64,000 nucleotides of DNA. It comes from Epithemia pelagica. Its lineage: Eukaryota; Protista; Bacillariophyta. Of this stretch, positions 2,109-32,832 are shown piece after piece. Position numbers and translations under genes: made by a program. The notes beneath the pieces are model-generated. The model saw only the letters and a list, made by a program, of their open reading frames with translations, was not told where the DNA came from and did not search any database. The stretch lies in the NCBI GenBank assembly GCA_946965045.2, contig OX337238.1, positions 2,852,001-2,916,000 of the forward strand, given 5' to 3'. Every line of letters begins with the position of its first letter. Positions within the stretch are counted from its first letter, which is position 1.

Positions 2109-3320
2109 ATGACGACTACACAGCAACAGCATGCAAACCAATCGGGGGTTGGCTTTCTCAACATTAATAATAACAGTAACGAGCCACATTGGAATACCAG
2201 TGACTGGCCAACCCTTTTGGGTGGGTGGCGTCGGTGGCATGCATCGGCTGTGCTCGACCATCCCGACCAGGATAACACTGCACAGACGGTTGTAGTTTTG
2301 GGAGGAGACAAACAAGGTCAAGGCTTTACCAACTCAGTTCTGCTGATGAATCTGGCAGAAAAAACTAAGCAATGGCGCGAAGGACCGCCATTAAACCGCA
2401 ACCGAGCCTATCATGCTGCGGTGATTTGTAACGGAGGAGTTTACGTTATCGGAGGACACAATGGAAGTTCACGTTTGGATAGTATCGAACGGATTGATGT
2501 CGAAAATTTGTGTTCCGAATCCATGGAAAGCTCTACCAGCAACCAATGGAAGACTGTGACTTGTCGATTATCTACGAGAAGAAATGAATGTTCGGCTGTT
2601 GTCGTGCACAATCGCTATATTGTCGTGATCGGTGGATCCAACGGAAACTTTTTGTCGTCGGTTGATATAATCGATACAGCTATCGCAAGCAACCACACTG
2701 TGATTGTGGGACCATCCATGTCAGTTCCTTGTTGTGGTTGTGCAAGTGCTGTCATTGGTGATCGCATTTTTGTCGTTGGAGGCTACAATGGGCACAATGC
2801 AGAAGACATCAAATCAGTGGAGTACTTGGAGATTCCTGATCCTTCAGGCAATGAGACAATGACCACAGTAGGTGCAGTGTTTCCATCTTCATGCCGTTGG
2901 ACACGTCATGACCAACTCAATCTTTCCATCCAACGGTGGTTTCATGCAGTTGTAGCTGTTGGATCATGTCTGATTGTTATGGGTGGTCGCTTAGCAGCGG
3001 ACACTGCAGAAGTCTTGGATACTCGCCGAAACACACTTTCGACCTTACCCCAATTAAAAGGGTCACGTTATTCATGCAGTGCTGTGGTTCACTCGAGGGG
3101 AATTGCTGTGATTAGTGGATATGACAATACTTCTTGCGCGACACTCTCCTTGGTTGACAAGAATACGTGGTGTTTTCGTCGACTCACGGAGCAGGCGCCG
3201 AGTACAATCTTTGGGTCAAGAACAGACTCACTGCGATCTTCTCCAGGGCCTACTACATCATGGAAGGAGTCCGGTGAGCGCCGTAAGAAGAAGTTATCAA
3301 CTGGGAAAACTGAGACGTAA
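2109..3320 (+). CDS. Kelch-repeat beta-propeller protein, copy 1 (type A, 403 aa)
   Basis: Six hydrophobic-GG motifs (VVVLGG, VYVIGG, IVVIGG, IFVVGG, LIVMGG, IAVISG), each preceded by R-x-x-H/C and with Kelch-type W/Y spacing. No BTB, F-box or signal peptide visible. The ATG lies in the conserved context tcataaaatctgcaagtaccATG. Confidence 0.93.
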   Translation: MTTTQQQHANQSGVGFLNINNNSNEPHWNTSDWPTLLGGWRRWHASAVLDHPDQDNTAQTVVVLGGDKQGQGFTNSVLLMNLAEKTKQWREGPPLNRNRAYHAAVICNGGVYVIGGHNGSSRLDSIERIDVENLCSESMESSTSNQWKTVTCRLSTRRNECSAVVVHNRYIVVIGGSNGNFLSSVDIIDTAIASNHTVIVGPSMSVPCCGCASAVIGDRIFVVGGYNGHNAEDIKSVEYLEIPDPSGNETMTTVGAVFPSSCRWTRHDQLNLSIQRWFHAVVAVGSCLIVMGGRLAADTAEVLDTRRNTLSTLPQLKGSRYSCSAVVHSRGIAVISGYDNTSCATLSLVDKNTWCFRRLTEQAPSTIFGSRTDSLRSSPGPTTSWKESGERRKKKLSTGKTET

Positions 3321-4440
3321 AAAGTGTTAATTGAGAAATATAAATACTATGATTTAAACTCAGTCATTTACCAACATTCTGGGAGAAATGCACTCCACGT
3401 TGTGTAACACAAACGTGCGAAAGCAAACATAGTTCTAGAGAGCTCACTTCAAGCAATCACTTCGTGATGTTGCTACGATCCTGTGGCACAAGGAACGATC
3501 TGCTTTGTTGGACCCACTGCATTGAAGTGCATTGCAGAAGTCCCCGGAAAAGATTTTGTGCGTCCGGTCGGTTCTTCTCTAGATCTGATGCGTGTCCGCA
3601 GGTTTTGTGGAGGCCACTGTTCGACGCCCCACTTCGCCCGGCGTTGCGCCCGGGACGCGCCGGCGGATTCGCGCCATAATTTTTTAAAATCCACGTTGTC
3701 ATTGACAATGGGAAATGGGAGTGACAAAATGCCGTTCCGCTGTGGATTTGGCCATTGCAGCAATCTGTTTTGGATATCGTGTACGGGACGAGAAACTTGT
3801 TATGCAAGCCAGCAACAAGACGATCTGGAAGTGCTCTTAAATGGCCTCAAAGACTGAAAGGACAAATCAACTAACCAAGGTAGTAATAGGGAGACCACAA
3901 TGGCGACAAGCCATGGGCAAGAAAACTCCAGCAGCAAAACAAGGTCGTAACCACATAAAGGCCCAATTGAACATTCTCCTACGCCAGCACGACACCCTCT
4001 CCCGAATGATCAGGCTGCAGCAGTATAAACTGTTATCGGTCCATCTCCATCTCCTCTCACTTTCATCAGTTGGCATCTGATGATGAATCCTGATCCATAT
4101 CCTTTTCGTCTCTTGTTGGCAGAATCATCACCATCACAATGAACGAGACGGCCCACACATTTCGCACACGTACGTTTCCAGAGTGTTTGTGTCAAGGATG
4201 ATGCTAATGACAATCCAGAATCCAGACACTTTCAAGGACCCACGACCAGGAGGACACTGCTACTGTCAAGCAAATGAGCCACAACCAGCCAGCATCACAC
4301 ATACCGCGGTTCCGGAACGAGGCGTGCTGCTGGAATAAGGGCGAGACCTCTCTTGTGTCATAGGAGTGCGGGTGAGAACAATCGATTGTTAGAATAGGTT
4401 GGATAGATGCACTGCCGAGATTGTATTCACTTCTCCTACC

Positions 4441-4632
4441 AATGCTCCTTGTGCGACACTCTCCTTGGTTGACAAGAATACATGGTGTTTTTGCCAAGTA
4501 TAATCGTTGGGTCAAGAACAGACTCACTGCGATCTACTCCAGGGCGTACTGCAACATGGAAGGAGTCTCATGAGCGCCCTAAGAAGAAGTCATCATCTGG
4601 CATAACTGAGACGAGGAAAATGTCAATTGAGC
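4441..4632 (+). pseudogene. Kelch 3'-end remnant
   Basis: Matches the last ~200 bp of the Kelch genes (tgtgcgacactctccttggttgacaagaatac...agaacagactcactgcgatct...actgagacg) with an internal deletion. Confidence 0.8.
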
Positions 4633-9360: not shown

Positions 9361-9459
9361 TACAGTAATGAAGGAGTCGAATGAGCGCAGAGCTGTCCAG
9401 TGAGAACCTATAAATTGTGCAAGTAGAACACGTTCATAAAAATAGAAAGTAGAAGTACA

Positions 9460-10292: not shown

Positions 10293-10360
10293 GAACCCTT
10301 TTTTTGACTAAGAACTTGGACTAAAAGTTTAGGATTGCGAAGAATGCATCGTGCTGATAG

Positions 10361-14220: not shown

Positions 14221-15432
14221 GTGACGATGGAACTGCAACAGCAAGCAAAGCAATCCGGACTTCGCTTTGTGGACAGTGACAACAACAGTCTTGCGCCTCA
14301 TTGGAATACCAATGACTGGCCTCCCCTTTTAGGTGGGTGGCGTCAGTATCATGCTTCAGTCGTGCTTGACCATCCCGAACAGGATGACAGGACACAGACG
14401 GTTGTTGTTTTGGGAGGACGCAAACAAAATCAAGGTTATACCAACTCAGTGGTGTTGTTGAGATTGTCAGATGACAGTAAGCAATGGCGGGAAGGACCGC
14501 CACTGAACGACAAGAGAGGCTTTCATGCTTCGGTGGTTTGTAACGGAGGAGTCTATGTGATCGGAGGATGGAAAGGAAGTTCACACTTGGATAGTATCGA
14601 ACGGATCGATGTTGCAAATTTGTGTTCCGAATCAATGGAAAGCTCTACCAGCAACCAATGGACGACCCTGACATGTCGATTGTCAACGAGGAGAAATGGA
14701 TGTTCGGCTGATGCCGTCCAAAATCGCTATATTGTCGTGATTGGTGGATCCAACGGATACTGTTTGTCGTCGGTTGATATTGTTGATACAGCTGTGCCAA
14801 GCAACCACAATGTGATTGTGGGACCATCCATGTCAGTTCCTCGGTCTGGCTGTGCTAGCGCTGTCGTTGGTGACCGCATTTTTGTCGTTGGAGGCTACAA
14901 TTGGCACAATGGAGAAGATCTCAAATCAGTGGAGTACTTGGAGATTCATAATCCTTCAGGCAATGAGACAATGAACACAGCAGGTGCAGTGTTTCCATCC
15001 TCATGCCGTTGGACACGTCATGACCAACTCAATCTTTCCATGCGACGGTGTGATCATGCAGTTGTAGCTATTGGATCATGTCTGATTGTTATGGGAGATT
15101 TCTTAGCCCGGATCAATGCTGAGGTCTTGGATACTCGACGAAACACAGTGTGGAGCTTTCCCCAATCAACAGGGTCACGTTATTTATGCAGTGCTGTGGT
15201 TCACTCGAGGGGAATTGCTGTGATTGGTGGAGATGACAATGCTTCTTGTGCGACACTATCGTTGTTTGACAAGAATACGTGGTGTTTTCGTCGACTCATT
15301 GAGCAGGTGCCAAGTACAATCTTTGGGACAAGCAGAGACTCACTGCGATCTGCTCAAGGGTGTACTACAGTATTGAATGAGTCTCATGAGCGCTCTAAGA
15401 AGATGTCATCAACTGGCAAAACTGAGACGTAG
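14221..15432 (+). CDS. Kelch-repeat protein, copy 4 (403 aa)
   Basis: Six Kelch motifs (fifth GG altered to GD). The ORF track starts it at GTG (gtgacgatggaactg), the position of the ATG in paralogs; the next in-frame ATG is two codons later. Confidence 0.9.
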   Translation: MTMELQQQAKQSGLRFVDSDNNSLAPHWNTNDWPPLLGGWRQYHASVVLDHPEQDDRTQTVVVLGGRKQNQGYTNSVVLLRLSDDSKQWREGPPLNDKRGFHASVVCNGGVYVIGGWKGSSHLDSIERIDVANLCSESMESSTSNQWTTLTCRLSTRRNGCSADAVQNRYIVVIGGSNGYCLSSVDIVDTAVPSNHNVIVGPSMSVPRSGCASAVVGDRIFVVGGYNWHNGEDLKSVEYLEIHNPSGNETMNTAGAVFPSSCRWTRHDQLNLSMRRCDHAVVAIGSCLIVMGDFLARINAEVLDTRRNTVWSFPQSTGSRYLCSAVVHSRGIAVIGGDDNASCATLSLFDKNTWCFRRLIEQVPSTIFGTSRDSLRSAQGCTTVLNESHERSKKMSSTGKTET

Positions 15433-17127: not shown

Positions 17128-19660
17128 TCTGAGAGCGACAATGAAATGAGGGGATGACTTTGGGCGCCTCCCTTTCTATTTTGGTCTTACTGGTCATGCT
17201 CTTGTGCTGATTCGAGCGATTCTTCCAGAGTCCCAACCACACATGGACCACAACATCTACCCACAGACGGACAGTCCAAACGTTTGCCTTTTCTTGGATT
17301 CGATCCAGCCGCTGTTAAGTGCTCTTCTCTTTGCTTTGTTTTGTCTTTTTTGTTGTTGTTTGGGGATATCGTTAATTGTTACTACGACTTTCTTGTTCTT
17401 TCCGGAACCAATGTCATGATGGTCTCTCTTTTGTCATCCTCGTCTCTCGTCGTTTCGCCGAGAGTCCTTTTACAGTTCGCGTCACAGTCACACCCTACAG
17501 TGAGTTCTCTACTACTTATCTGATTGGAAGGCATCCGAGTCCCGAGTCCGAAGTACTTTCGCGACTATACTCGAACCTCCGATTCCGATCCCGTCTCAGA
17601 CGCCCGCGACTCCACAAAAAAAGGAGTCCCCGTCTGTCCGAGTCACGGATGTCACGGGCCAACAGCAAAAAGACGGAACACCCCTTCAAGAACCGTCCGA
17701 CAACACTGCCATCGCAAAACTTGCATCAACAAGGACGCACAACGAAGCGGCAAGGGCCAAATATTGTAGAGACCCAGACACCGCCACCCATCTCCTCCAC
17801 AACGGAATTTACTTGATCCCTTTCACGGTTGACCACTTGGGGTCAATGGGACACTTTGCCACCCGCCTACTCTTCAATCAAGATCACCCACTGCCCTTCT
17901 CCACCGCCAAACCTCCGGACTGGAATGATCCACACTTCGGAAAATCAACAACTCGAAGCAACCAACACCCAGCAGCATTTGCTCTGTACCAAAACGTCGA
18001 ACACTCGCCAGAGAACATTCTTGCCAAAGCAAACAAACATGTCAAACTCCACTATCCAGAAGCAAACATCTTCACCATGGCCCACTACGCAAAAGCATCC
18101 CTGGCTCATACCATTGTATCGTCCCTAGCAATACACGCCAACAACCAAATTGCAGCAAACAGAGCACACACAACAGTTCAAAGATCGCGCACAACCCAGC
18201 TGGCAAACTTAGCCAGAACAAACTTCGCCCCGGTGACACCACTTTACTCCCCACGGCCTGTTGCAGATTTTCTCTCACCGGGACCGGACGCCCCACTCCT
18301 CTGCTCGCTTACCGCTTAGGAGTTCCCCAATACATAGACCGGTAAAATAAAAACAAAAAAAAAGAGTAAAAAAAAAAGTCCAATCACCATGACGACCTAC
18401 CGACAAAACGACGGCCCACACACATTCGCACACGTTTCCAGTGTGTTTGTTGTGTCAAGAATGATGATGATGATCGAGTGATGGCGGCAATCCTCCAGAC
18501 ACACTCACTCACTCCGATGAACAGCACTCTCCAACCGGCATGACGGATGATTTGCGCAGAGAATGTTTCTTTTTGGGGAGGATGACGACGACAAGGTCCG
18601 TGGTGGTCTATGTATAAAGATCGTTGGCAAAAACACACAGACAGACAGGAATGGGGGAGCTGGTGGAGCATTCGACAGGATGCCGCCGTCCTCGTTGCTG
18701 AATTTCGCGGGTCCTTTTTGGGCCACTATATAATACATGAGGATGATACCCAGCCCGAAACGCCGCCATGGAGCTCTACACCAGTCATCCTCGAACCAAA
18801 CCAAAATAAAACAAAACCATGGAGCCGCATTCACAACCACCACAACAACAAGGACGAGGACTACACAATGCTGCGACAAACTGGAGCAAGAAACTAGCAT
18901 TCTACCATAACCATTGGCACTGTTTCGCAACGACTTGTTGAGTTGCGACACTGCTCGTGCCACACAGTGAGGAGAGAACGAGCGATGATGAGGCTAATGA
19001 TTGAACCATGAGCTCACAAAGAAGAGCGAACCAAAGTCGCTGTCTCAACGTGGAAGCTCCTAGCATTTGTTGCACCTTCGCGTTTGCCAGTGTGGGACAA
19101 CCGTGTGTGATCGATGATTGGATTGGAACCTATGGATTTGGCCCATTTCGTTGCGCATGGAGGAGGATAGAGCGTTTGGCTGTGATGCTGATGTATTGTA
19201 CAAACAGCCAGAAGGAATTTGAAAAGTGCCTCAAGACTGTAACGGACAAGTACTGCTAACTTACCAATATACAGTGGCAAAGGGGTTCCAGTGAGGCCAC
19301 GCGTTCTTCTAAATGGTCAGTGTATTCGTGGAATCTCTGGATTTATGCCGAAGCAGTTATTTTCGTGGATGGTTTTGGACCCGTTCATCTGTCCAAGGTC
19401 ATCCATCCGATGACTCAAAGAAGGATGGTTTTGGACGTGTTCATCTGTCCAAGGCCATCCATCCGAGGATATACGACCATGATTCAAATCGCCGCGTAGA
19501 GGTGCGTCCGTCGTTGCTGCCGTCTTTGGTTCCTGCTTTGGTGTGAAAGGTCCAAAATATTCAGTCCATTTTGTTCGGAGTCCATTTTCGTATTTTTTTG
19601 AGGAGAAAGACGAAACTCTGAGGTCCATTCCTTGGTGTTGTCATAAAATCTGCAAGTATC
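16240..19660 (+). repeat. Segmental duplication, approximately equal to 28230..31620
   Basis: Near-identical, including the LINE fragment; a few SNPs distinguish the copies. Confidence 0.9.
17674..18378 (+). mobile_element. 5'-truncated non-LTR retrotransposon 3' end (705 bp), possibly RLE/CRE-like
   Basis: Open frame ending at TAG 18319, then a short 3' UTR and an A-rich tail. Absent at the paralogous sites ~23960 and ~62495 (aaaaaga|tcc.atcaccatg). HNEAARAKY and LIPFTVDHLGSMG resemble the C-terminal end of restriction-like endonuclease LINEs. Confidence 0.7.
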
Positions 19661-20872
19661 ATGACGACTACACAGCAACAGCATGCAAACCAATCTGGGC
19701 TTGCCTTTCTCAACATTAATAATAACAGTAACGAGCCACATTGGAATACCAGTGACTGGCCAACCCTTTTGGGTGGGTGGCGTCGGTGGCATGTATCGGC
19801 TGTGCTCGACCATCCCGACCAGGATAACACTGCACAGACGGTTGTAGTTTTGGGAGGAGACAAACAAGGTCAAGGCTTTACCAACTCAGTTCTGCTGATG
19901 AATCTGGCAGAAAAAACTAAGCAATGGCGCGAAGGACCGCCATTAAACCGCAACCGAGCCTATCATGCTGCGGTGATTTGTAACGGAGGAGTTTACGTTA
20001 TCGGAGGACACAATGGAAGTTCACGTTTGGATAGTATCGAACGGATTGCTGTCGAAAATTTGTGTTCCGAATCCAAGGAAAGTTCTACCAGCAACCAATG
20101 GACGACTGTGACTTGTCGATTGTCGACCGCAAGAGATAAATGTTCGGCTGTTGCCGTGCACAATCGCTATATTGTTGTGATTGGTGGATACAACGGAGAC
20201 CCTTTGTCGACGGTTGATATAATCGATACAGGTATGGCATGCAACCACACTGCGATTGTGGGACCATTCATGTCACTGCCTCGGTCTGGTTGTGCTAGCG
20301 CTGTCATTGGTAATCGTATTTTGGTTGTTGGAGGCTACAATAGGTATAATGCAGAAGTGCTCCATTCAGTGGAGTACTTGGAGATTCAAGATCATTCAGG
20401 GATCGAGACAATGAACACAGCAAGTGCAGTGTTTCCATCCTCATGCCGTTGGACACGTCATGACCAAATCAATCTTTCCATGCGACGGTGTGATCATGGA
20501 GTTGTAGCTGTTGGATCATGCTTGATTGTTATGGGAGGTTTCTCAGCACCGGACACTGTTGAAGTCTTGGATACTCGCCGAAACACACTTTCGACCTTAC
20601 CCCAATTAACAGGGTCACGTTATTCATGCAGTGCTGTGGTTCACTCGAGGGGAATTGCTGTGATTAGTGGATATGACGATACTTCTTGTGCGACACTATC
20701 GTTGGTTGACAAAAATACGTGGTGTTTTCGTCGACTCATTGAGCAGGTGCCGAGTACAATCTTTGGGTCAAGAACAGACTCACTGCGATCTTCTCCAGGG
20801 CCTACTACATCATGGAAGGAGTCCGGTGAGCGCCGTAAGAAGAAGTTATCAACTGGGAAAACTGAGACGTAA
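19661..20872 (+). CDS. Kelch-repeat protein, copy 5 (type A, 403 aa)
   Basis: Intact ORF; N- and C-termini nearly identical to copy 1. Confidence 0.93.
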   Translation: MTTTQQQHANQSGLAFLNINNNSNEPHWNTSDWPTLLGGWRRWHVSAVLDHPDQDNTAQTVVVLGGDKQGQGFTNSVLLMNLAEKTKQWREGPPLNRNRAYHAAVICNGGVYVIGGHNGSSRLDSIERIAVENLCSESKESSTSNQWTTVTCRLSTARDKCSAVAVHNRYIVVIGGYNGDPLSTVDIIDTGMACNHTAIVGPFMSLPRSGCASAVIGNRILVVGGYNRYNAEVLHSVEYLEIQDHSGIETMNTASAVFPSSCRWTRHDQINLSMRRCDHGVVAVGSCLIVMGGFSAPDTVEVLDTRRNTLSTLPQLTGSRYSCSAVVHSRGIAVISGYDDTSCATLSLVDKNTWCFRRLIEQVPSTIFGSRTDSLRSSPGPTTSWKESGERRKKKLSTGKTET

Positions 20873-21269: not shown

Positions 21270-22481
21270 ATGACGATGACACTGCAACGGCAAGCAGAGC
21301 AATCCGGCTTTTGCTTTCTGGACAGTGACAATAACAGTACCGTGCCGCAATGGAATGAAAATGACTGGCCTCCCCTTTTGGGTGGATGGCGTCGTTCGCA
21401 TGCATCGGTTGTGCTCAACCATCCCGAACAGGACAACAATGCACAGACGCTTGTTGTTTTGGGAGGATACGAACAAAATCAAGGCTACACCAAGTCAGTG
21501 TTGTTGTTGAGGTTGGCAAAAGAAAACTTGCAATGGCGCGAAGGACCGCCGTTGAACAACAACCGAGCCTATCATGCCGCGGTGATTTGTAGCGGAGGAG
21601 TTTACGTGATCGGAGGACACAATGGAAGTTCACGCAGGGATAGTATCGAACGGATTGATGTTACAAATTTGTGTTCCGAATCCATGGAAAGCTCTACCAG
21701 CAACCAATGGACAACTGTGACTTGTCGATTGTCGACGGCAAGAGATAAATGTTCGGCTGTTGCCGTGCACAGTCGCTATATTGTTGTGATTGGTGGATAC
21801 AACGGAGACCCTTTGTCGTCGGTTGATATAATCGATACAGGTATCGCAAGCAACCACACTGTGACTGTGGGACCATCCATGACAGTTCCTCGGTCTGGTT
21901 GTGCAAGTGCTGTCATTGGCCACCGCATTTTTGTTGTTGGAGGCCTCACTGGGTACAATGGAGATGATTTCAAATCAGTGGAGTATTTGGAGATTCATGA
22001 TTTTCCCGGCAATGACACAATGGGCACAGCAAGTGCAGTGTTTTCATCCTCACGCCGTTGGACGAGTCACAACGAGGTCAATCTTTCCATCGGACGATGT
22101 ATTCATGCAATTGTAGCTGTTGGATCATGTCTTATTGTGATGGGAGGTATCTTGGCCCCGGAGACTGTTGAAGTCATGGACACTCGACGGAACACTGTTT
22201 GGAGCTTTCCCCAATCAACAGGGTCACGTTATTCATGCAGTGCTGTGGTTCACTCGAGGGGAATTGCTGTGATTAGTGGTAGTGACAATGCTTCTTGTGC
22301 GACACTATCGTTGTTTGACAAGAATACGTGGTGTTTTCGTCGACTCATTGAGCAGGTGCCAAGTACAATCTTTGGGACAAGCAGAGACTCACTGCGATCT
22401 GCTCAAGGGTGTACTACAGTATTGAATGAGTCTCATGAGCGCTCTAAGAAGAAGTCATCAACTGGCAAAACTGAGACGTAG
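21270..22481 (+). CDS. Kelch-repeat protein, copy 6 (403 aa)
   Basis: True start taken as ATG 21270 (gcaagtaccATGacgatgaca, as in paralogs) inside the longer ORF 21144..22481; six Kelch motifs. Confidence 0.9.
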   Translation: MTMTLQRQAEQSGFCFLDSDNNSTVPQWNENDWPPLLGGWRRSHASVVLNHPEQDNNAQTLVVLGGYEQNQGYTKSVLLLRLAKENLQWREGPPLNNNRAYHAAVICSGGVYVIGGHNGSSRRDSIERIDVTNLCSESMESSTSNQWTTVTCRLSTARDKCSAVAVHSRYIVVIGGYNGDPLSSVDIIDTGIASNHTVTVGPSMTVPRSGCASAVIGHRIFVVGGLTGYNGDDFKSVEYLEIHDFPGNDTMGTASAVFSSSRRWTSHNEVNLSIGRCIHAIVAVGSCLIVMGGILAPETVEVMDTRRNTVWSFPQSTGSRYSCSAVVHSRGIAVISGSDNASCATLSLFDKNTWCFRRLIEQVPSTIFGTSRDSLRSAQGCTTVLNESHERSKKKSSTGKTET

Positions 22482-24407: not shown

Positions 24408-24410
<3 letters not shown>

Positions 24411-25582: not shown

Positions 25583-26791
25583 ATGACGACGACGCTGATG
25601 CATCAGCAAGCAAAACAATCTGGTCTTTGCTTTCTAAACATAAATAGTGAGGCGTCACATTGGAATGTCAATGACTGGCCTCGTCTTTTAGGTGGGTGGC
25701 GTGCGTATCATGCTTCAGTCATGCTCGACCATCCCCAACAAGATGACGAAACCCAGACGGTTGTAGTCCTTGGAGGACGCAAGCCAAATCACGGCTACAC
25801 CAATTCAGTGTTGTTCATGAGTTTGGGAGATGAAAACAAGCAATGGCGGGAAGGACCGCCGTTCATCAGCAACCGAGCCTATCATGCTGCGGTGGTTTGT
25901 AACGGAGGAGTTTACGTGATAGGAGGACACAATGGAAGATCATGTTTGGAAAGTATCGAACGGATTGATGTTACAAATTTGTGTTCCGAATCCATGGAAA
26001 GTTCTACCAGCAACCAATGGACGACCCTGACTTGTCGATTGTCTACGGCAAGAGATGAATGTTCGGCTGTTGTCGTGCACAATCGCTATATTGTCGTGAT
26101 CGGTGAATCCAATAGTGACTCTTTGTCGACGGTTGATATAATCGATTCAGGTATCGCATGCAACCACACTGTGATTGTGGGACCATCGATGACAGTTCCT
26201 CGGGCTGGTTGTGCTAGCGCTGTCATTGGTAATCGTATTTTGGTTGTTGGAGGCTACAATAGGCACAATGCAGAAGTGCTCCAATCAGTAGAGTATTTGG
26301 AGATTCATGATCCTTCAGGCATCGAGACAATGAACACAGCAAGTGCAGTGTTTCCATCCTCATGCCGTTGGACACGTCATGACCAAATCAATCTTTCCAT
26401 GCGACGGTGTGATCATGCAGTTGTAGCTGTTGGATCATGCCTGATTGTAATGGGAGGTTCCTTAGCCGTGGACGCTGTTGAAGTCTTGGACACTCGACGG
26501 AACACTGTGTGGACCTTTCCCCAATTAACAGGGTCCCGTTATTCATGCAGTGCTGTGGTTCACTCGAGGGGAATAGCTGTGATAAGTGGAGATGAAAATC
26601 CTTCATGTGCGACACTTTCTTTGATTGACAAGAATACGTGGTGTTTTCGTCGGCTCATTGAGCATGCGCCACGTACAATCTTTGGGACCAGAACAGACTC
26701 ACTGCGATCTACTCAAGGGTGTAATACAGTATTGATAGAGTTTGATGAACGCCCTAATACGAAGTTATCGAATGGGAAATCTCAGACGTAA
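25583..26791 (+). CDS. Kelch-repeat protein, copy 7 (402 aa)
   Basis: True start taken as ATG 25583 (tctgaaagcaccATG) inside ORF 25532..26791; third GG altered to GE. Confidence 0.9.
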   Translation: MTTTLMHQQAKQSGLCFLNINSEASHWNVNDWPRLLGGWRAYHASVMLDHPQQDDETQTVVVLGGRKPNHGYTNSVLFMSLGDENKQWREGPPFISNRAYHAAVVCNGGVYVIGGHNGRSCLESIERIDVTNLCSESMESSTSNQWTTLTCRLSTARDECSAVVVHNRYIVVIGESNSDSLSTVDIIDSGIACNHTVIVGPSMTVPRAGCASAVIGNRILVVGGYNRHNAEVLQSVEYLEIHDPSGIETMNTASAVFPSSCRWTRHDQINLSMRRCDHAVVAVGSCLIVMGGSLAVDAVEVLDTRRNTVWTFPQLTGSRYSCSAVVHSRGIAVISGDENPSCATLSLIDKNTWCFRRLIEHAPRTIFGTRTDSLRSTQGCNTVLIEFDERPNTKLSNGKSQT

Positions 26792-26823
26792 AAAGTGGTA
26801 ATTGAGAAAAATAAATCTTAGGA

Positions 26824-29093
26824 CTAAAACGCAGTCATGAGAATGATTACTGTGAATCGAAGTGCTTGCTGTTGTTCCTGAGAACTATATGCGTTAACAA
26901 ACATGCTGGGAGAAATGCAGATCACGTTGTGTAACATAAACGAACGACAGCAACTAGAAGTCACCTTAAGCAGGTAATCACTTGTTGTTGTTGGTACGAT
27001 CTTTTGTAGCACAAGGAACGATCCATGTGGGCTGGTCATAGCACAAGCGGAAGAAAAAACAGTCGGTCTGCTCTTGGGTAGAACATCCTCCAAAATGGTC
27101 CACAATTCATACGACACAGGCACTGGCAAACTGTCACATAGAATCCATGCCCCAATTGGTGTTTGATCCAAAGAAGAATCGTGATATGGCAAAAGTCGTA
27201 CCATGCGTAGTCCTTCATATCATTGGGTTCATGTTCTGTACTTTGTACTCGTCCTCACGGTGGATGCAATTATGGGAGAGACAATGTGGTTGGTGTTTTG
27301 ACAGAGTTGATCGACACGGCGTGTCTGTTGCAAAATCTCCTCGTGAAATCACGATTCCAAAGAATGGGGCTCCGAAACGTCGTCCTGGAGAGAATCCTTG
27401 TCGTGTTGTTGTTGGAGTGAAACTGTCGATTCAGCATTGCTCATAATTGGAGTATCTGGAAGCGGAGTTTTCTTCCATAATGACAGTAACGCCTGATTTA
27501 CCAAACTCGCCGCACTTTGGTCCTTCACCGTGGCATCCTTGGAAGCGACGTCTTGTTCCCGATCCACGTCCCAGGAGGTGGAGTGTGCCGTGTCTCCGGC
27601 TTCTGACGACGACAAGACGAGGGACGGGGGAGACTCCAAGACCATGCATGCTTCTTCATCATCAACGACAATGCATTCTTCATCATTGTCTTCTTGTTCT
27701 ATAGTGTTATCCTTTGAGCGGCAAGGGGACGAAACAGACATTGCGGGAGAAATGGGATTCCAGACATTGGTCATCCACAAGAAGGGCCTTCCCACAAGAT
27801 CACTATCATCGTGAGCTGCAGCATCCTTTCCACGACGACGACAAGTATGGTGGTCCCCAAATGGAGGATTCAACTTCGAATCGTCGTTCTTCTTGTAGAT
27901 CTGGGCCGAAGACAACAGCGGTACGGTCGTTTTCATTGCATACCTCGTACCATCATCACCACTACTACAACTATCATTGCTGCTGCTGCTGCCGCAAGTC
28001 CACAGAATGGATTCAGGTGCCGCCAAGACCGATGATGATAAGGACGATAACGACGACAATGAAGAGGAATACGAATCCAATCGTTGATGGTTTCGAGTGA
28101 TGGACGACGACAAGACGGTTGCTACGTTGGAAACAAGCGTTGGTGTCACGTGATTGTCGTTGATGTTGTTTGGAGGGTCTTGCAGTCGAAGTGGTGGTGG
28201 TGATGGTGGTCCAAGAGACGCACTGTCAACTGCACCATCATTACCCCACTCTGGCCTAACGTGACTCAGCTCCGGGTCCAGGTGGTTGTTGTCCTCTCGA
28301 ACCTAGGAGTGCGTTTTTTGCTTGTCCACTCTTATTGCGGGTGACACGATCATCTTTCGTAGTAGTTTGTCTTGATGGTTTGAGAAGAAAGGGGATACCG
28401 GGGCATTGCAATGGGTAGCCGTTTGCACCCTTTTCATCAAGTCCAAGGCTTTGTCTTGTTCTTGTTTCGTCGTTCGACACAAGCGATCGACCTGGACTTG
28501 CTGTTGACGTGCCGTCATGTTTCTTCTTCCTGTGTTGGGTGATGGTGTCGTGAACCAGTGTTTGCTTCGTTTTTCGGTAGGAGTGCTTCTTCTTCTTCTT
28601 CTTCTAGTGGTTGTCCGTTCGGGTGGAGATGGGTCGTGAAATTGAGGAGAATGCTTTGGCGTTTGCTTGCTTCTTTGTTGTTGTTTGTATTGTTCATGAA
28701 AGTCCTCTCTCTCTCCTCGTCGTCCTCCTTCGTCTTGTTACCAATGAGGAATGAGGACGCGTGGTATAGTGTGCGTGTATTGTCTTGGAAGTTGGGGAAG
28801 GAGAACCCTTTGCCTGTTACAGTCCGTACAACAGTCGTACACTCCTTCATATGTGATAGCCCCAGACTCCAAGGACTTCACCCAGTCTTGAAGGCTGTTG
28901 TACTGGATCGCTCGGTGTGATTTTTGGTCGGACAAGATGGTGGTGGTGGTCCTTTTTCGGAAGGATACGTTGCTTCTCTACTCGATCGAACCGTTCTCAC
29001 ATCGTCCGTGTCGTCGTAGGTGTCTGCTTCCTTTTCGGAAAGGTTGCTGACCTTGTCGAAAGGGTTATAAATTATTTGTGTTTGAATCGACAT
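26824..29093 (-). pseudogene. Family X remnant (longest extent)
   Basis: Fragments 28878..29093, 28515..28850, 27349..28149, 27036..27218 and 26824..27204 are colinear with other X copies, with several frameshifts. Confidence 0.55.
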
Positions 29094-29640
29094 TCTGAGA
29101 GCGACAATGAAATGAGGGGATGACTTTGGGCGCCTCCCTTTCTATTTTGGTCTTACTGGTCATGCTCTTGTGCTGATTCGAGCGATTCTTCCAGAGTCCC
29201 AACCACACATGGACCACAACATCTACCCACAGACGGACAGTCCAAACGTTTGCCTTTTCTTGGATTCGATCCAGCCGCTGTTAAGTGCTCTTCTCTTTGC
29301 TTTGTTTTGTCTTTTTTGTTGTTGTTTGGGGATATCGTTAATTGTTACTACGACTTTCTTGTTCTTTCCGGAACCAATGTCATGATGGTCTCTCTTTTGT
29401 CATCCTCGTCTCTCGTCGTTTCGCCGAGAGTCCTTTTACAGTTCGCGTCACAGTCACACCCTACAGTGAGTTCTCTACTACTTATCTGATTGGAAGGCAT
29501 CCGAGTCCCGAGTCCGAAGTACTTTCGCGACTATACTCGAACCTCCGATTCCGATCCCGTCTCAGACGCCCGCGACTCCACATAAAAAAGGAGTCCCCGT
29601 CTGTCCGAGTCACGGATGTCACGGGCCAACAGCAAAAAGA

Positions 29641-30345
29641 CGGAACACCCCTTCAAGAACCGTCCGACAACACTGCCATCGCAAAACTTGCATCAACAAG
29701 GACGCACAACGAAGCGGCAAGGGCCAAATATTGTAGAGACCCAGACACCGCCACCCATCTCCTCCACAACGGAATTTACTTGATCCCTTTCACGGTTGAC
29801 CACTTGGGGTCAATGGGACACTTTGCCACCCGCCTACTCTTCAATCAAGATCACCCACTGCCCTTCTCCACCGCCAAACCTCCGGACTGGAATGATCCAC
29901 ACTTCGGAAAATCAACAACTCGAAGCAACCAACACCCAGCAGCATTTGCTCTGTACCAAAACGTCGAACACTCGCCAGAGAACATTCTTGCCAAAGCAAA
30001 CAAACATGTCAAACTCCACTATCCAGAAGCAAACATCTTCACCATGGCCCACTACGCAAAAGCATCCCTGGCTCATACCATTGTATCGTCCCTAGCAATA
30101 CACGCCAACAACCAAATTGCAGCAAACAGAGCACACACAACAGTTCAAAGATCGCGCACAACCCAGCTGGCAAACTTAGCCAGAACAAACTTCGCCCCGG
30201 TGACACCACTTTACTCCCCACGGCCTGTTGCAGATTTTCTCTCACCGGGACCGGACGCCCCACTCCTCTGCTCGCTTACCGCTTAGGAGTTCCCCAATAC
30301 ATAGACCGGTAAAATAAAAACAAAAAAAAAGAGTAAAAAAAAAAG
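29641..30345 (+). mobile_element. Second copy of the 705-bp LINE 3' fragment
   Basis: Same sequence and junctions as 17674..18378; copied with the surrounding block. Confidence 0.7.
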
Positions 30346-31620
30346 TCCAATCACCATGACGACCTACCGACAAAACGACGGCCCACACACATTCGCACAC
30401 GTTTCCAGTGTGTTTGTTGTGTCAAGAATGATGATGATGATCGAGTGATGGCGGCAATCCTCCAGACACACTCACTCACTCCGATGAACAGCACTCTCCA
30501 ACCGGCATGACGGATGATTTGCGCAGAGAATGTTTCTTTTTGGGGAGGATGACGACGACAAAGTCCGTTGTGGTCTATGTATAAAGATCGTTGGCAAAAA
30601 CACACAGACAGACAGGAATGGGGGAGCTGGTGGAGCATTCGACAGGATGCCGCCGTCCTCGTTGCCGAATTTCGCGGGTCCTTTTTGGGCCACTATATAA
30701 TACATGAGGATGATACCCAGCCCGAAACGCCGCCATGGAGCTCTACACCAGTCATCCTCGAACCAAACCAAAATAAAACAAAACCATGGAGCCGCATTCA
30801 CAACCACCACAACCACAAGGACGAGGACTACACAATGCTGCGACAAACTGGAGCAAGAGACTAGCATTCTACCATAACCATTGGCACTGTTTCGCAACGA
30901 CTTGTTGAGTTGCGACACTGCTCGTGCCACACAGTGAGGAGAGAACGAGCGATGATGAGGCTAATGATTGAACCATGAGCTCACAAAGAGAGAGCCAAAG
31001 TCGCTGTCTCAACGTGGAAGCTCCTAGCATTTGTTGCATCTTCGCGTTTGCCAGTGTGGGACAACCGTGTGTGATCGATGATTGGATTGGAACCTATGGA
31101 TTTGGCCCATTTCGTTGCGCATGGAGGAGGATAGAGCGTTTGGCTGTGATGCTGATGTATTGTACAAACAGCCAGAAGGAATTTGAAAAGTGCCTCAAGA
31201 CTGTAACGGACAAGTACTGCTAACTTACCAATATACAGTGGCAAAGGGGTTTCAGTGAGGCCACGCGTTCTTCTAAATGGTCAGTGTATTCGTGGAATCT
31301 CTGGATTTGTGCCGAAGCAGTTATTTTCGTGGATGGTTTTGGACCCGTTCATCTGTCCAAAGTCATCCGATCAATAAGAGAAGGATGGTTTTGGACGTGT
31401 TCATCTGTCCAAGGCCATCCATCCGAGGATCTAAGACCATGATTCAAATCGCCGCGTAGAGGTGCGTCCGTCGTTGCTGCCGTCTTTGGTTCCTGCTTTG
31501 GTGTGAAAGGTCCAAAATATTCAGTCCATTTTGTTCGGAGTCCATTTTCGTATTTTTTTGAGGAGAAAGACGAAACTCTGAGGTCCATTCCTTGGTGTTG
31601 TCATAAAATCTGCAAGTACC

Positions 31621-32832
31621 ATGACGACTACACAGCAACAGCATGCAAACCAATCTGGGCTTGCCTTTCTCAACATTAATAATAACAGTAACGAGCCACA
31701 TTGGAATACCAGTGACTGGCCAACCCTTTTGGGTGGGTGGCGTCGGTGGCATGTATCGGCTGTGCTCGACCATCCCGACCAGGATAACACTGCACAGACG
31801 GTTGTAGTTTTGGGAGGAGACAAACAAGGTCAAGGCTTTACCAACTCAGTTCTGCTGATGAATCTGGCAGAAAAAACTAAGCAATGGCGCGAAGGACCGC
31901 CACTAAACCGCAACCGAGCCTATCATGCTGCGGTGATTTGTAACGGAGGAGTTTACGTTATCGGAGGACACAATGGAAGTTCACGCTTGGATAGTATCGA
32001 ACGGATTGCTGTCGAAAATTTGTGTTCCGAATCCATGGAAAGTTCTACCAGCAACCAATGGACGACCCTGACTTGTCGATTGTCGACCGCAACAGATGAA
32101 TGTTCGGCTGTTGCCGTGCACAATCGCTATATCGTTGTGATTGGTGGATCCAACGGAGACCCTTTGTCGACGGTTGATATAATCGATACAGGTATCGCAT
32201 GCAACCACACTGTGATTGTGGGACCATCCATGTCACTGCCTCGGTCTGGTTGTGCTAGCGCTGTCATTGGTAATCGTATTTTGGTTGTTGGAGGCTACAA
32301 TAGGCATAATGCAGAAGTGCTCCATTCAGTGGAGTACTTGGAGATTCAAGATCATTCAGGGATCGAGACAATGAACACAGCAAGTGCAGTGTTTCCATCC
32401 TCATGCCGTTGGACACGTCATGACCAAATCAATCTTTCCATCAAACGGTGGTTTCATGGAGTTGTAGCTGTTGGATCATGCCTGATTGTTATGGGAGGCT
32501 ACTTTGGCGTGGACACTGTTGAAGTCTTGGATACTCGCCGAAACACACTTTCGACCTTACCCCAATTAACAGGGTCACGTTATTCATGCAGTGCTGTGGT
32601 TCACTCGAGGGGAATTGCTGTGATTAGTGGATATGAGGATACTTCTTGTGCGACACTCTCCTTGGATGACAAAAATACGTGGTGTTTTCGTCGACTCATT
32701 GAGCAGGTGCCGAGTACAATCTTTGGGTCAAGAACAGACTCACTGCGATCTTCTCCAGGGCCTACTACATCATGGAAGGAGTCCGGTGAGCGCCGTAAGA
32801 AGAAGTTATCAACTGGGAAAACTAAGACGTAA
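31621..32832 (+). CDS. Kelch-repeat protein, copy 8 (type A, 403 aa)
   Basis: Intact ORF; termini match copies 1 and 5. Confidence 0.93.
   Translation: MTTTQQQHANQSGLAFLNINNNSNEPHWNTSDWPTLLGGWRRWHVSAVLDHPDQDNTAQTVVVLGGDKQGQGFTNSVLLMNLAEKTKQWREGPPLNRNRAYHAAVICNGGVYVIGGHNGSSRLDSIERIAVENLCSESMESSTSNQWTTLTCRLSTATDECSAVAVHNRYIVVIGGSNGDPLSTVDIIDTGIACNHTVIVGPSMSLPRSGCASAVIGNRILVVGGYNRHNAEVLHSVEYLEIQDHSGIETMNTASAVFPSSCRWTRHDQINLSIKRWFHGVVAVGSCLIVMGGYFGVDTVEVLDTRRNTLSTLPQLTGSRYSCSAVVHSRGIAVISGYEDTSCATLSLDDKNTWCFRRLIEQVPSTIFGSRTDSLRSSPGPTTSWKESGERRKKKLSTGKTKT

What the first reader, a model, noticed from the sequence alone, without database searches (positions are those of the whole stretch)
2109..32832. 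Type-A trio: near-identical gene ends and flanks around a swapped central cassette
Seen: copies 1, 5 and 8 share nearly identical flanks. By manual alignment, copies 1 and 5 differ at 5 of the first ~147 residues and 3 of the last ~80, but at about 41 of the ~175 central residues (blades 3-5). The centre of copy 8 is a patchwork: its HSVEYLEIQDHSGIE matches copy 5, its RWFH matches copy 1, and its GGYFGVD matches type B. Inference: a constant frame with an exchangeable centre resembles cassette-type segmental gene conversion (vlsE, msp2, chicken Ig), which I do not know of for Kelch genes.
Basis: partly seen in the sequence, partly recalled or inferred. Interest (0 to 1): 0.8.

Follow-up and report, generated by a model that had tools for sequence, protein, structure and literature searches.

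The report
Kelch gene array reshuffled by gene conversion
Three near-twin Kelch propeller genes in a diatom differ mainly in their middle because stretches were copied in from neighbouring gene copies; this is ordinary exchange within a large tandem gene family, and I found no sign of a programmed antigen-switching system.

Summary
Copies 1 and 5 differ at 5, 41 and 3 residues in the N-terminal, central and C-terminal parts, exactly as reported. The flanks are 95-99% identical, and copy 8 is a patchwork.

The cause is recombination, not point mutation:
- Synonymous divergence is about 8 times higher in the centre than in the N-terminal part.
- 56 of the 63 central nucleotide differences carry states found in other paralogs (26% expected by chance).
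- In the centre, copies 5, 8 and 14 group with the copy-7 type (support 100/99), and AU tests reject the congruent trees.

The comparison with vlsE, msp2 or chicken Ig does not hold:
- "Type A" has at least 7 full-length copies in this genome, each with its own start codon and 5' flank.
- One old central swap, inherited by duplication, explains most of the trio's pattern. 12-120 nt micro-tracts matching nearby copies explain the rest.
- Across 49 copies, breakpoints and significant tracts lie all along the gene.
- No bounding repeats or G4 motifs were found.
- Copy 5's counterpart on a second contig of the same assembly, probably the other haplotype, encodes an identical protein.

Variable residues cluster in the B-C and D-A loops, which bind peptides in the nearest solved Kelch domains. 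This suggests, but does not prove, selection for binding diversity.

This scan reached the same verdict on two other Kelch arrays of this genome (s1-230528, s1-257004). No RNA data were available.

The parts
1149..2108 (+). Type-A 5' flank of copy 1
   Evidence: 96.3% identical to the flank of copy 5 and 94.9% to that of copy 8. It belongs to the 1149-7469 block that matches 30657-36973 at 95.8%.
2109..3320 (+). Copy 1 (A1): intact 403-aa six-bladed Kelch propeller gene
   Evidence: Pfam Kelch_1, E = 1.6e-33. AF2 model with pTM 0.79. Foldseek finds the Kelch domains of KLHL12 and Keap1. A 99.9% identical twin lies 6730 bp upstream, just outside the window.
2532..2996 (+). Central segment of copy 1 (CDS nt 424-888, roughly blades 3-5), carrying the A1-type state
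   Evidence: 86.5% identical to copy 5. dS is 0.187 here against 0.022 in the N part. Much of the A1-type state is shared with k127030, k112576, copy 11, E25A and E26A, so it is probably the older type-A state.
3321..3618 (+). Type-A 3' flank of copy 1
   Evidence: 99.3% identical to the flank of copy 5 and 98.7% to that of copy 8.
14221..15432 (+). Copy 4, carrier of the RCDH state at nt 822-833
   Evidence: It shares the RCDH micro-tract state with copy 5 and copy 7.
15729..19660 (+). Repeated upstream block of copy 5, twin of 27689-31620
   Evidence: Only 1 difference to the copy-8 block across 16329-18528 (2200 nt). Differences cluster at 15729-16328 and in the proximal 5' flank. The block contains a dispersed element of about 690 bp.
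19661..20872 (+). Copy 5 (A5): intact type-A gene with a swapped centre
   Evidence: Painting, with its sisters copy 8 and copy 14 left out as donors, gives nt 1-423 type A, 424-572 copy-6-like, 573-625 k70509-like, 626-861 copy-7-type and 901-1212 mostly type A, with a copy-4-like patch at 1022-1088. Its counterpart on contig ctg1108l encodes the same protein and differs by 2 synonymous nt.
20084..20548 (+). Central swapped segment of copy 5 (CDS nt 424-888)
   Evidence: In nt 424-861, copies 5, 8 and 14 form a clade with the copy-7 type (support 100/99). Monophyly of type A is rejected there (p = 0.0016). The best donors anywhere in the genome are the four copy-7-type genes, at 91-92%.
20482..20493 (+). 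RCDH micro-tract in copy 5 (CDS nt 822-833)
   Evidence: Copy 5 and copy 7 share the copy-4-like state, while copy 8, copy 14, k121520 and k-82437 carry RWFH.
21270..22481 (+). Copy 6, donor-like for nt 424-572 of the A5-type centre
   Evidence: 4 mismatches in 149 nt to copy 5. It lies 1.6 kb downstream of copy 5.
25583..26791 (+). Copy 7 (copy-7 type), donor-like for nt 626-861 of the A5-type centre
   Evidence: 9 mismatches in 236 nt to copy 5. It joins copies 5, 8 and 14 in the central-segment clade.
27689..31620 (+). Repeated upstream block of copy 8
   Evidence: 27689-33130 matches 15729-21170 at 98.1%.
31336..31452 (+). Converted patch in the 5' flank of copy 8
   Evidence: It holds the 13-site cluster of changes found only in copy 8 among the trio. 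It is 97-98% identical to the upstream regions of k70509, copy 11 and k127030, but only 91% to those of copies 1 and 5.
31621..32832 (+). Copy 8 (A8): intact type-A gene, A5-type with extra patches
   Evidence: Painting gives copy 5 for nt 1-415, copy 14 for 449-861, type B for 862-890 and copy 5 for 891-1212. The unit joins an A5-type left side to an A1/B-type right side about 300 bp after the stop codon.
32499..32511 (+). GGYFGVD micro-tract in copy 8 (CDS nt 879-891; at most 862-898)
   Evidence: Identical to the type-B copies, including copy 9 only 3.1 kb downstream. Copies 5 and 14 differ at 7 bases here.
34776..35986 (+). Copy 9 (type B, frameshifted), nearest possible donor of GGYFGVD
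   Evidence: Identical to copy 8 over CDS nt 862-898. It is 1211 nt long and out of frame.
42977..44188 (+). Copy 11: hybrid with a type-A head and another tail
   Evidence: Painting gives nt 1-543 A-type, 544-784 type B and 785-1212 k-52842-like with 1 mismatch.
63779..64000 (+). Start of copy 14 (A14), an A5-type copy that is frameshifted and runs off the window
   Evidence: 18370-19883 matches 62490-64000 at 98.2%. The full copy was recovered from L012; it is 1211 nt long with 12 stops in the copy-1 frame.

Best explanation
The window lies inside an array of small, single-ORF Kelch propeller genes that spans several hundred kb on contig C11 of a genome that earlier scan notes call a pennate diatom. 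The array evolves by two processes: segmental duplication through unequal crossing-over, and frequent non-allelic (interlocus) gene conversion between copies.

The type-A genes descend from one ancestral unit. That common descent is why their ends and flanks are 95-99% identical.

Proposed history of the trio:
1. In the ancestor of copies 5, 8 and 14, CDS nt ~443-900 was overwritten by tracts resembling copy 6 and the copy-7 type. These are today the downstream neighbours of copy 5.
2. That unit was then duplicated. Copy 8's unit joins an A5-type left side to an A1/B-type right side about 300 bp past the stop codon.
3. Short tracts of about 12-120 nt, matching nearby copies, then made the three copies differ. 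These are RCDH in copy 5, GGYFGVD in copy 8, and a patch in copy 8's 5' flank.

Shown: the mosaic structure, its statistical support and the presence of donor-like copies nearby.

Inferred:
- The direction and order of the events.
- The rate: exchange changes many more bases than point mutation does.
- The role of selection: converted variants persist preferentially in the B-C and D-A loops, the face that binds peptides in related Kelch domains, so the array behaves as a diversifying repertoire.
For: Different ancestry of the centre:
- Copy 1 against copy 5 is 86.5% identical in the centre and 96-99% in the ends and flanks.
- dS is 0.187 in the centre, 0.022 in the N part and 0.071 in the C part.
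- 56 of 63 central differences carry states present in non-A paralogs (26% expected; p = 1e-25).

Incongruent trees:
- Type A is one clade in the C segment (97/97).
- In nt 424-861, copies 5, 8 and 14 sit with the copy-7 type (100/99).
- AU tests give p = 0.0016, 4e-4 and 3e-7.

Exchange is family-wide:
- GENECONV-like tracts are significant after Bonferroni correction in at least 45 pairs and lie anywhere in the gene.
- Copying-model painting gives a mean of 6.9 segments per copy.

Exchange outpaces point mutation:
- The copy-5 and copy-8 units show 1 difference in 2200 nt of upstream block, but 34 in the bins over the CDS (33 by direct count) and about 25 in the proximal 5' flank.
- 29-30 of the 33 CDS differences are shared with other paralogs.

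Donor-like copies lie 1.6-6 kb away.

Other contigs of the same assembly, probably the second haplotype, carry different mosaics and a different unit number.

Fold and variable loops:
- The model is a six-bladed propeller similar to the Kelch domains of KLHL12 and Keap1.
- Mean entropy is 0.94 in B-C loops, 0.71 in D-A loops and 0.37 in strands (p = 2e-7).
- 15 of the 19 propeller-domain amino-acid differences between copies 5 and 8 (20 over the whole protein) fall in those loops (p = 6e-5).
Against: - The A5-type centre is only 91-92% identical to any single present-day donor. It fits a composite of donors at about 97%. The swap is therefore not recent, the exact donors are unknown, and the direction is inferred by parsimony.
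- Selection is not demonstrated. Segment dN/dS values are 0.4-1.4. Greater loop variability could simply reflect relaxed constraint.
- The second contig set comes from the same assembly project (ctg1337l is 100% identical to the window), so the sequence has no fully independent confirmation.
- One base found only in copy 8 among the trio (31903) is not seen in the Logan contigs of four runs.
- No expression data were available.
Confidence: 0.8

Rival explanations
1. Programmed cassette-type variation. One expressed type-A locus keeps a constant frame and repeatedly receives its centre from donor copies, as in vlsE, msp2, pilE or chicken Ig V pseudogenes.
For: - The ends are near-identical around a divergent centre.
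- Across five A-B units the type-A centre differs by 6-15 per 100 nt, the spacer by about 0.6 and the B gene by about 1.3.
- Two contigs that are probably the other haplotype carry further central variants, E25A and E26A.
- Pseudogenised copies share tracts with intact ones.
Against: - There are at least 7 full-length type-A copies, each with its own ATG and 5' flank. The proposed donors are also full-length genes.
- One inherited swap explains copies 5, 8 and 14.
- A-type heads occur with non-A tails.
- Tracts and breakpoints occur all along the gene and in every subfamily.
- No bounding repeats or G4 motifs were found.
- Copy 5's counterpart on the second contig has an unchanged protein.
- Part of the A-B contrast comes from a crossover that placed an A5-type gene next to a B unit.
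Confidence: 0.04
2. The reverse history. The centres are old and kept distinct, perhaps by selection, while the ends and flanks of type-A copies have been repeatedly homogenised by exchange among the A copies (concerted evolution of the frame).
For: - dS between the A5-type centre and single copy-7-type genes (0.11-0.15) exceeds dS between the ends of copies 1 and 5 (0.02-0.07).
- A 2.2-kb stretch of the copy-5 and copy-8 upstream blocks is virtually identical, which could reflect recent homogenisation.
- Distances in the N and C segments correlate with each other about as well as adjacent segments do (0.24-0.38).
Against: - It needs two homogenised regions per gene rather than one converted tract.
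- Against a composite of donors the centre is about 97% identical, similar to the 96-98% of the ends and flanks.
- The A1-type state of nt ~292-669 is shared by most type-A copies and hybrids, which points to the A5-type centre as the derived one.
Confidence: 0.12
3. Point mutation under positive selection. The centre diverged in place by independent substitutions, without any exchange.
For: - Central dN/dS values of 0.5-1.4 are high for a conserved fold.
- The differences favour the binding-face loops.
Against: - Synonymous divergence is also about 8 times higher in the centre than in the N part.
- 89% of the variant states are found in other paralogs.
- The segment trees conflict with strong support.
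Confidence: 0.01
4. Assembly artefact. The mosaics are chimeric consensus sequences made when near-identical repeats were assembled.
For: - Repeat units of 6.7 and 12 kb are 98-100% identical.
- A base at 31903 found only in copy 8 among the trio, and an indel at 34976, disagree with the Logan contigs.
- The ENA contig ctg1337l is the same assembly as the window, so it is not independent.
Against: - The same swapped centre occurs in three copies in different contexts, and again on a separate contig (ctg1108l) with an identical protein.
- Short-read unitigs from four runs show the branch between the RWFH and RCDH forms exactly at 32441.
- The mosaic tracts match real paralogs over tens to hundreds of bases.
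Confidence: 0.03

Closest known systems
Interlocus gene conversion and unequal crossing-over in clustered plant resistance genes (for example the RPP8 NLR triad, PMC6771003)
   Same: - Linked paralogs share polymorphism through intergenic gene conversion plus crossing-over.
- Copy number varies between haplotypes.
- The variation is proposed to be kept by selection.
   Different: - Here the repeat domain is a Kelch beta-propeller, with no NB-ARC or other signalling domain detected.
- The host is a diatom.
- The array holds dozens of copies.
- Neither function nor selection has been shown.
[quoted passage not shown]
   Same: - It is also a stramenopile lineage.
- A fast birth-and-death repeat-protein family is remodelled by exchange between paralogs, with variability in the ligand-binding repeats.
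- Its authors likewise raised the possibility of somatic recombination.
   Different: - In Ectocarpus each repeat is an exon and whole exons are shuffled.
- The genes here are single ORFs, and tracts do not follow blade limits (breakpoints lie everywhere).
Gene conversion between paralogous merozoite surface antigen genes of Plasmodium falciparum (PMC10919680)
   Same: Conversion between neighbouring paralogs creates deeply divergent segments inside otherwise similar genes.
   Different: - There it involves two paralogs and allelic dimorphism in a parasite under immune pressure.
- Here it is a many-copy array in a free-living alga.
Programmed cassette systems: Borrelia vlsE, Anaplasma msp2, Neisseria pilE/pilS, chicken Ig V pseudogenes (from my own knowledge)
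   Same: The result is a segmental mosaic built from homologous copies in cis, and some copies that share tracts are pseudogenes.
   Different: - No single expression site.
- The donors are not truncated or promoterless.
- No bounding repeats or G4 element.
- No restriction of exchange to one cassette region.
- No evidence of high-frequency switching.
Kelch domains of BTB-Kelch substrate adaptors (KLHL12, Keap1, KLHL20, KLHL3)
   Same: - Six-bladed Kelch propeller fold (Foldseek E about 1e-17, target-normalised TM 0.76-0.82).
- The variable residues lie in the B-C and D-A loops, which bind peptides in those proteins.
   Different: - Pfam finds no BTB, BACK or F-box domain.
- The protein is a bare propeller with a short N-terminal part and a disordered, basic 50-aa tail.

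Membership tests
Cassette-type programmed gene-conversion system (vlsE / msp2 / pilE / chicken Ig) | One expression site fed by silent, promoterless or truncated donor cassettes | tested here: not met
   - At least 7 full-length type-A copies, and donor-like copies of 403 aa with their own ATG.
- 240-580 bp of homologous 5' flank across subfamilies.
- 36 of 49 copies read through without a stop.
- Transcription itself was not tested.
Cassette-type programmed gene-conversion system (vlsE / msp2 / pilE / chicken Ig) | Exchange confined to a defined variable region, bounded by conserved repeats or driven by a cis element such as a G4 | tested here: not met
   - Breakpoints number 20, 25 and 26 per 100 nt in the N, middle and C parts.
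- Significant tracts lie at nt 1-215, 150-404, 482-771 and 1046-1209, among others.
- No G4 motif anywhere in the window.
- Only weak, chance-level repeats within the type-A genes.
Cassette-type programmed gene-conversion system (vlsE / msp2 / pilE / chicken Ig) | High-frequency switching within a clone | tested here: inconclusive
   - Only Logan contigs were available, and these drop rare variants.
- Indirect evidence against: copy 5's counterpart on ctg1108l differs by 2 synonymous nt while its flanks differ by about 0.9%.
Cassette-type programmed gene-conversion system (vlsE / msp2 / pilE / chicken Ig) | One-way transfer from donors to the acceptor | tested here: inconclusive
   - Direction cannot be read from present-day sequences alone.
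- A-type heads joined to non-A tails (copy 11, k70509, k162679) show that type-A loci are rebuilt outside the centre as well.
Non-allelic (interlocus) gene conversion / NAHR in a tandem gene array | Different segments of one gene have significantly different phylogenies | tested here: met
   Segment trees. AU tests give p = 0.0016, 4e-4 and 3e-7; only the first grouping was named before the trees were seen.
Non-allelic (interlocus) gene conversion / NAHR in a tandem gene array | Runs of shared variants between otherwise divergent copies that are longer than chance allows | tested here: met
   My own GENECONV-like run test on 676 polymorphic sites and 966 pairs gave at least 45 pairs with Bonferroni p < 0.05. 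The p-values are an analytic approximation, not output of the GENECONV program.
Non-allelic (interlocus) gene conversion / NAHR in a tandem gene array | Tract differences are pre-existing paralog variants, and silent sites are affected too | tested here: met
   56 of 63 differences shared with paralogs against 26% expected. dS is 0.187 in the centre and 0.022 in the N part.
Non-allelic (interlocus) gene conversion / NAHR in a tandem gene array | Structural variation in unit number and order between haplotypes | tested here: met
   Contig ctg1108l has about 12 kb more between two anchors and a copy-7-type gene where the window has copy 4. That ctg1108l is the other haplotype is inferred from 98-99% identity and shared gene order.
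Kelch beta-propeller proteins | Kelch repeats that fold into a six-bladed propeller | tested here: met
   Pfam Kelch_1, E = 1.6e-33. AF2 shows six four-stranded blades, pTM 0.79. Foldseek finds KLHL12 and Keap1.
BTB-Kelch or F-box-Kelch ubiquitin-ligase adaptors | An N-terminal BTB/BACK or F-box domain that links the propeller to a cullin ligase | tested here: not met
   Pfam finds only Kelch and propeller families. Residues 1-40 are short and of low confidence in the model.
Diversifying recognition repertoire (NLR/MHC-like evolution) | Variability concentrated on the ligand-binding surface, with evidence of positive or balancing selection | tested here: inconclusive
   - Entropy is higher in B-C and D-A loops than in strands (p = 2e-7), and weakly higher than in the other loops (p = 0.036).
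- 15 of 19 differences between copies 5 and 8 lie in those loops.
- Segment dN/dS is 0.4-1.4, with no recombination-aware site test.

The most novel reading that the evidence does not exclude
The Kelch arrays of this diatom are a selected recognition repertoire, for immune-like or self/non-self recognition. In this reading, conversion between copies is the mechanism that creates diversity in the peptide-binding loops. Mitotic exchange would produce new mosaics within clonal lineages at a measurable rate, and some loci, such as the type-A genes at the head of A-B units, would act as preferred acceptors.
Probability: 0.1. Interest if true: 0.75.

Novelty: new member of a known kind. Interest (0 to 1): 0.35.

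Why it matters
Tandem families that reshuffle their binding surfaces by gene conversion are well known from plant resistance genes, the MHC and parasite antigens. I found no paper describing this for Kelch propellers or for diatoms.

This genome gives about 900 first-look matches to the family. In this array, exchange has changed far more bases than point mutation since the latest duplications. The variable residues sit on the face that binds peptides in related Kelch domains.

That makes the family a reasonable candidate for a rapidly evolving recognition system in diatoms and a convenient natural system for measuring non-allelic conversion rates. It does not show a new molecular mechanism.

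Tried and rejected
- Reads. The one run search found four runs of the organism, all held as Logan contigs of unknown kind, and no RNA run. Laying them gave short unitigs only. They show the RWFH/RCDH branch at 32441 and a few single-base disagreements, but they cannot show rare variants, expression or spanning reads.
- Cis elements. A G4 regex on both strands found none in the window. The direct and inverted repeat search around the three genes gave only weak, blade-level matches.
- A better donor. A whole-genome search with the A5 centre found nothing closer than the four copy-7-type genes, at 91-92%.
- Independent confirmation from ENA. Contig ctg1337l is 100% identical to the window, so it is the same assembly. 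Only ctg1108l and ctg1253l add information.
- Type A as a privileged acceptor. The A-B unit profile suggested this. Three results weaken it:
  - other subfamilies show the same pattern of divergent CDS inside near-identical flanks;
  - copy 5's counterpart on ctg1108l is unchanged;
  - part of the contrast comes from a crossover.
- Protein names and taxonomy. All close homologs come from the same unnamed ENA assembly.
- Literature. Three searches found no report on diatom Kelch arrays.
- Transposon carriage of type-A genes. The upstream block is mostly array-specific sequence plus one dispersed element of about 690 bp. It is not a mobile unit that carries the gene.

Full report
**Setting**

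The window is G000:C11:2852001-2916000, in a 60.5-Mb genome of 23 contigs. Earlier notes of this scan call the organism a pennate diatom.

The window holds about 14 head-to-tail copies of a single-ORF gene of about 1.2 kb for a 403-aa Kelch protein. One copy is split by a copia-like LTR element (47013-53160, LTRs 99.4% identical). A protein search of the whole genome gave 924 first-look candidates. The close relatives lie in an array on C11 between about 2.5 and 3.04 Mb.

To see the trio in context I fetched 240 kb around the window. I aligned 45 near-full-length copies from the resulting 304-kb stretch.

**Check of the observation**

Copy 1 against copy 5 gives 5, 41 and 3 amino-acid differences in residues 1-147, 148-322 and 323-403.

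| Region | Copy 1 vs copy 5, DNA identity |
|---|---|
| 5' flank (960 nt) | 96.3% |
| CDS nt 1-423 | 98.3% |
| CDS nt 424-888 | 86.5% |
| CDS nt 889-1212 | 96.3% |
| 3' flank (298 nt) | 99.3% |

Copy 8 is mostly like copy 5, with local exceptions.

Three corrections are needed.
- RWFH in copy 8 was not borrowed from copy 1. Copy 14 and two copy-7-type genes (k121520, k-82437) carry the same 18-nt stretch. Copy 5 and copy 7 carry a 12-nt, copy-4-like RCDH state.
- Type A is not a trio. The genome holds at least seven copies with A-type ends: a 99.9% twin of copy 1 lying 6.7 kb upstream of it, k127030, k112576, copy 14, and copies 1, 5 and 8. Three further hybrids have only the A-type head: copy 11, k70509 and k162679.
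- The pattern of near-identical flanks around a divergent CDS also occurs in other subfamilies. For example, k-104883 and k147802 have flanks 99.6% and 98.3% identical but 113 CDS differences.

**Recombination, not point mutation**

- Synonymous divergence between copies 1 and 5 is 0.187 in the centre, 0.022 in the N part and 0.071 in the C part. The centre therefore has a different history, not just faster protein evolution.
- For 56 of the 63 central nucleotide differences, the copy-5 state is found in a non-A paralog. For 57, the copy-1 state is. A random change would match a paralog 26% of the time (binomial p = 1e-25).
- Maximum-likelihood trees conflict between segments:
  - In the C segment the seven type-A copies form one clade (support 97/97).
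  - In the N segment they sit together inside a 100/99 clade.
  - In nt 424-861, copies 5, 8 and 14 group with the four copy-7-type genes (100/99), away from copy 1.
- AU tests reject type-A monophyly in the centre (p = 0.0016). They also reject the A5-plus-copy-7 grouping in the N part (p = 4e-4) and the C part (p = 3e-7). The last two groupings were named after the tree was seen.
- A GENECONV-like test of my own, measuring runs of shared states over 676 polymorphic sites, gives at least 45 pairs significant after Bonferroni correction.

**Anatomy of the trio**

A copying-model (Viterbi) painting of each copy on the others gives the following for copy 5 when its sisters are left out as donors:

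| CDS nt | Best match | Mismatches |
|---|---|---|
| 1-423 | type A (k112576) | 4 |
| 424-572 | copy 6 | 4 |
| 573-625 | k70509 | 4 |
| 626-861 | copy 7 | 9 |
| 862-900 | k147802 | 2 |
| 901-1212 | type A, with a copy-4-like patch at 1022-1088 | 3 |

Copies 6 and 7 are the next genes downstream of copy 5. No better donor for the centre exists anywhere in the genome: the best single matches are 91-92% identical. Most other type-A copies and hybrids share much of the copy-1 state of the centre. This makes the A5-type centre the derived one.

Copies 5, 8 and 14 share this swapped centre, so a single event followed by duplication accounts for the main contrast in the trio.

Copy 8's unit matches copy 5's unit on the left (27689-33130 against 15729-21170, 98.1%). 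It matches copy 1's unit on the right (30657-36973 against 1149-7469, 95.8%). The switch lies about 300 bp after the stop codon, as expected from an unequal crossover.

The differences among the three sisters are small tracts:
- RCDH in copy 5: at least 12 nt.
- GGYFGVD in copy 8: 13-37 nt, identical to type B, including copy 9 only 3.1 kb away.
- A patch of about 80-120 nt in copy 8's 5' flank. It matches the upstream regions of k70509, copy 11 and k127030 at 97-98%, against 91% for copies 1 and 5.

**Rate of exchange**

The copy-5 and copy-8 units show the following differences:

| Region | Differences |
|---|---|
| Upstream block, 16329-18528 (2200 nt) | 1 |
| CDS (200-nt bins) | 34 |
| Proximal 5' flank | about 25 |
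| 15729-16328 | 39 |

Differences thus sit where paralogous donors exist and are almost absent where they do not. Of the 33 CDS differences counted directly, 29-30 are states shared with other paralogs. Exchange has therefore changed far more bases than point mutation since the last duplication, or since the last homogenisation of that block.

With a diatom mutation rate of about 5e-10 per site per generation (from memory, not checked here), this suggests roughly 1e-5 events per gene per generation. I consider that an ordinary rate for ectopic recombination and well below programmed switching. This is an inference, not a measurement.

**A second set of contigs**

The ENA assembly ERZ21939226 contains ctg1337l, which is 100% identical to the window and therefore the same assembly. 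It also contains two further contigs, ctg1108l and ctg1253l. These match parts of the array at 98-99% with the same gene order, but their unit content differs. They are most likely the other haplotype.

- In ctg1108l, the type-A gene that heads the A-B-copy-3-ADH stretch (E25A) is a different mosaic. It is k70509-like at nt 1-257, copy-1-like at 292-682, k175147-like at 690-870 and copy-8-like at 871-1212.
- That gene differs from copy 1 at 80 sites. The next 9 kb differs at about 0.5-1%.
- Across five A-B units, mean pairwise differences per 100 nt are 6-15 in the type-A centre, about 0.6 in the spacer and about 1.3 in the B gene.

This looks like a hot acceptor, but three points temper that reading:
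- Part of the contrast comes from the crossover that put an A5-type gene next to a B unit.
- Other subfamilies behave the same way.
- Copy 5's counterpart on ctg1108l differs by only 2 synonymous bases, while its flanks differ by 0.9%.

**Why this is not a cassette system**

- Copies are full length, with their own start codon and a homologous 5' flank of 240-580 bp.
- 36 of 49 copies read through without a stop.
- The frame is not constant.
- Family-wide, painting breakpoints are spread evenly: 20, 25 and 26 per 100 nt in the N, middle and C parts, with a mean of 6.9 segments per copy.
- Nucleotide diversity is not higher in the centre, and distances in 200-nt segments correlate only at about 0.1-0.4, even between neighbouring segments.
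- There are no G4 motifs and no bounding direct repeats.
- Somatic switching could not be tested directly. Only Logan contigs were available and no RNA run was found.

**What the proteins look like**

Pfam finds only Kelch and propeller families. An AlphaFold model built on a 50-sequence alignment (pTM 0.79) is a six-bladed propeller spanning residues about 40-350, followed by a disordered, basic tail. Apart from designed proteins, the best Foldseek matches are the Kelch domains of KLHL12, Keap1, KLHL20 and KLHL3. No BTB or F-box domain is present.

Amino-acid entropy across the copies:

| Structural class | Mean entropy |
|---|---|
| B-C loops | 0.94 |
| D-A loops | 0.71 |
| A-B and C-D loops | about 0.6 |
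| Strands | 0.37 |

- B-C plus D-A loops exceed strands (p = 2e-7) and, weakly, the other loops (p = 0.036).
- 15 of the 19 amino-acid differences between copies 5 and 8 within the propeller (20 over the whole protein) fall in the B-C and D-A loops (p = 6e-5).
- From general knowledge of Keap1 and KLHL structures, those loops form the peptide-binding face.

This fits selection for binding diversity. It would also fit relaxed constraint on loops, and segment dN/dS values of 0.4-1.4 do not decide between them.

**Comparison with known systems, and verdict**

The behaviour matches clustered plant resistance genes such as RPP8, which combine intergenic conversion, crossing-over and copy-number variation (PMC6771003). 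It also matches paralog conversion in Plasmodium surface antigens (PMC10919680). The nearest case by lineage is LRR/TPR exon shuffling in the brown alga Ectocarpus, whose authors also speculated about somatic recombination (PMC3341825).

I found no paper on Kelch arrays in diatoms. Two earlier follow-ups of this scan reached the same reading for other Kelch arrays of this genome (s1-230528, s1-257004).

The finding is real. It is a new example of a known evolutionary process, not a new mechanism.

Noticed in passing
window:47013-53160: A copia-like LTR retrotransposon with 710-bp LTRs 99.4% identical is inserted into a Kelch copy, splitting it into 46556-46996 and 53174-53849. Its 1417-aa ORF (48291-52544) has no Pfam match at E <= 0.01.
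   Followed up: partly
window:1-7326 and G000:C11:2847379-2852000: The A-B unit of 6730 bp is tandemly duplicated at 99.9-100% identity, with 1 difference in each gene; window 1-596 equals 6731-7326. This is either a very recent duplication or an assembly duplication.
   Followed up: partly
window:29643-30329 (also the matching place in copy 5's upstream block, near 17680-18360): An element of about 690 bp in the upstream blocks of copies 5 and 8 has copies at 80-95% identity on contigs C1, C2, C5, C9, C10 and C17. It is absent from copy 14's unit. It is probably a small non-autonomous mobile element.
   Followed up: partly
window:55499-57052 (-), 11014-11904 (-), 27349-28149 (-); L025:13600-15117 (-): A second repeated ORF family is interspersed in the array. 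It has a Ser-rich N-terminal half and a hydrophobic C-terminal part. The 517-aa member has no Pfam match. It is duplicated together with the Kelch units.
   Followed up: no
window:34976 and window:31903: The Logan contigs of three runs carry an extra A after 34976, where copy 9 is frameshifted. All four runs show T instead of C at 31903, a base found only in copy 8 among the trio. These could be contigs of paralogs laid on this place, or small assembly errors. k130183 shares copy 9's 1211-nt length and out-of-frame reading.
   Followed up: no
L025 and L029 (ENA ERZ21939226 ctg1108l) against window:1721-23923: The probable second haplotype has about 12 kb more between the ADH-like ORF and copy 5. 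It also has a copy-7-type gene where the window has copy 4. The array is therefore structurally heterozygous.
   Followed up: partly
G000, several contigs: Many more distant family members (55-60% identity) lie at low or high coordinates of contigs C3, C6, C8, C9, C10, C13 and C17. This suggests a preference for chromosome ends. Contig lengths were not available to check this.
   Followed up: no
window:9609-10241: A 210-aa ORF downstream of copy 3 was annotated with Pfam ADH_Fe_C in the ENA gene calls of the matching contig. It looks like a fragment of an iron-type alcohol dehydrogenase caught inside the array.
   Followed up: no
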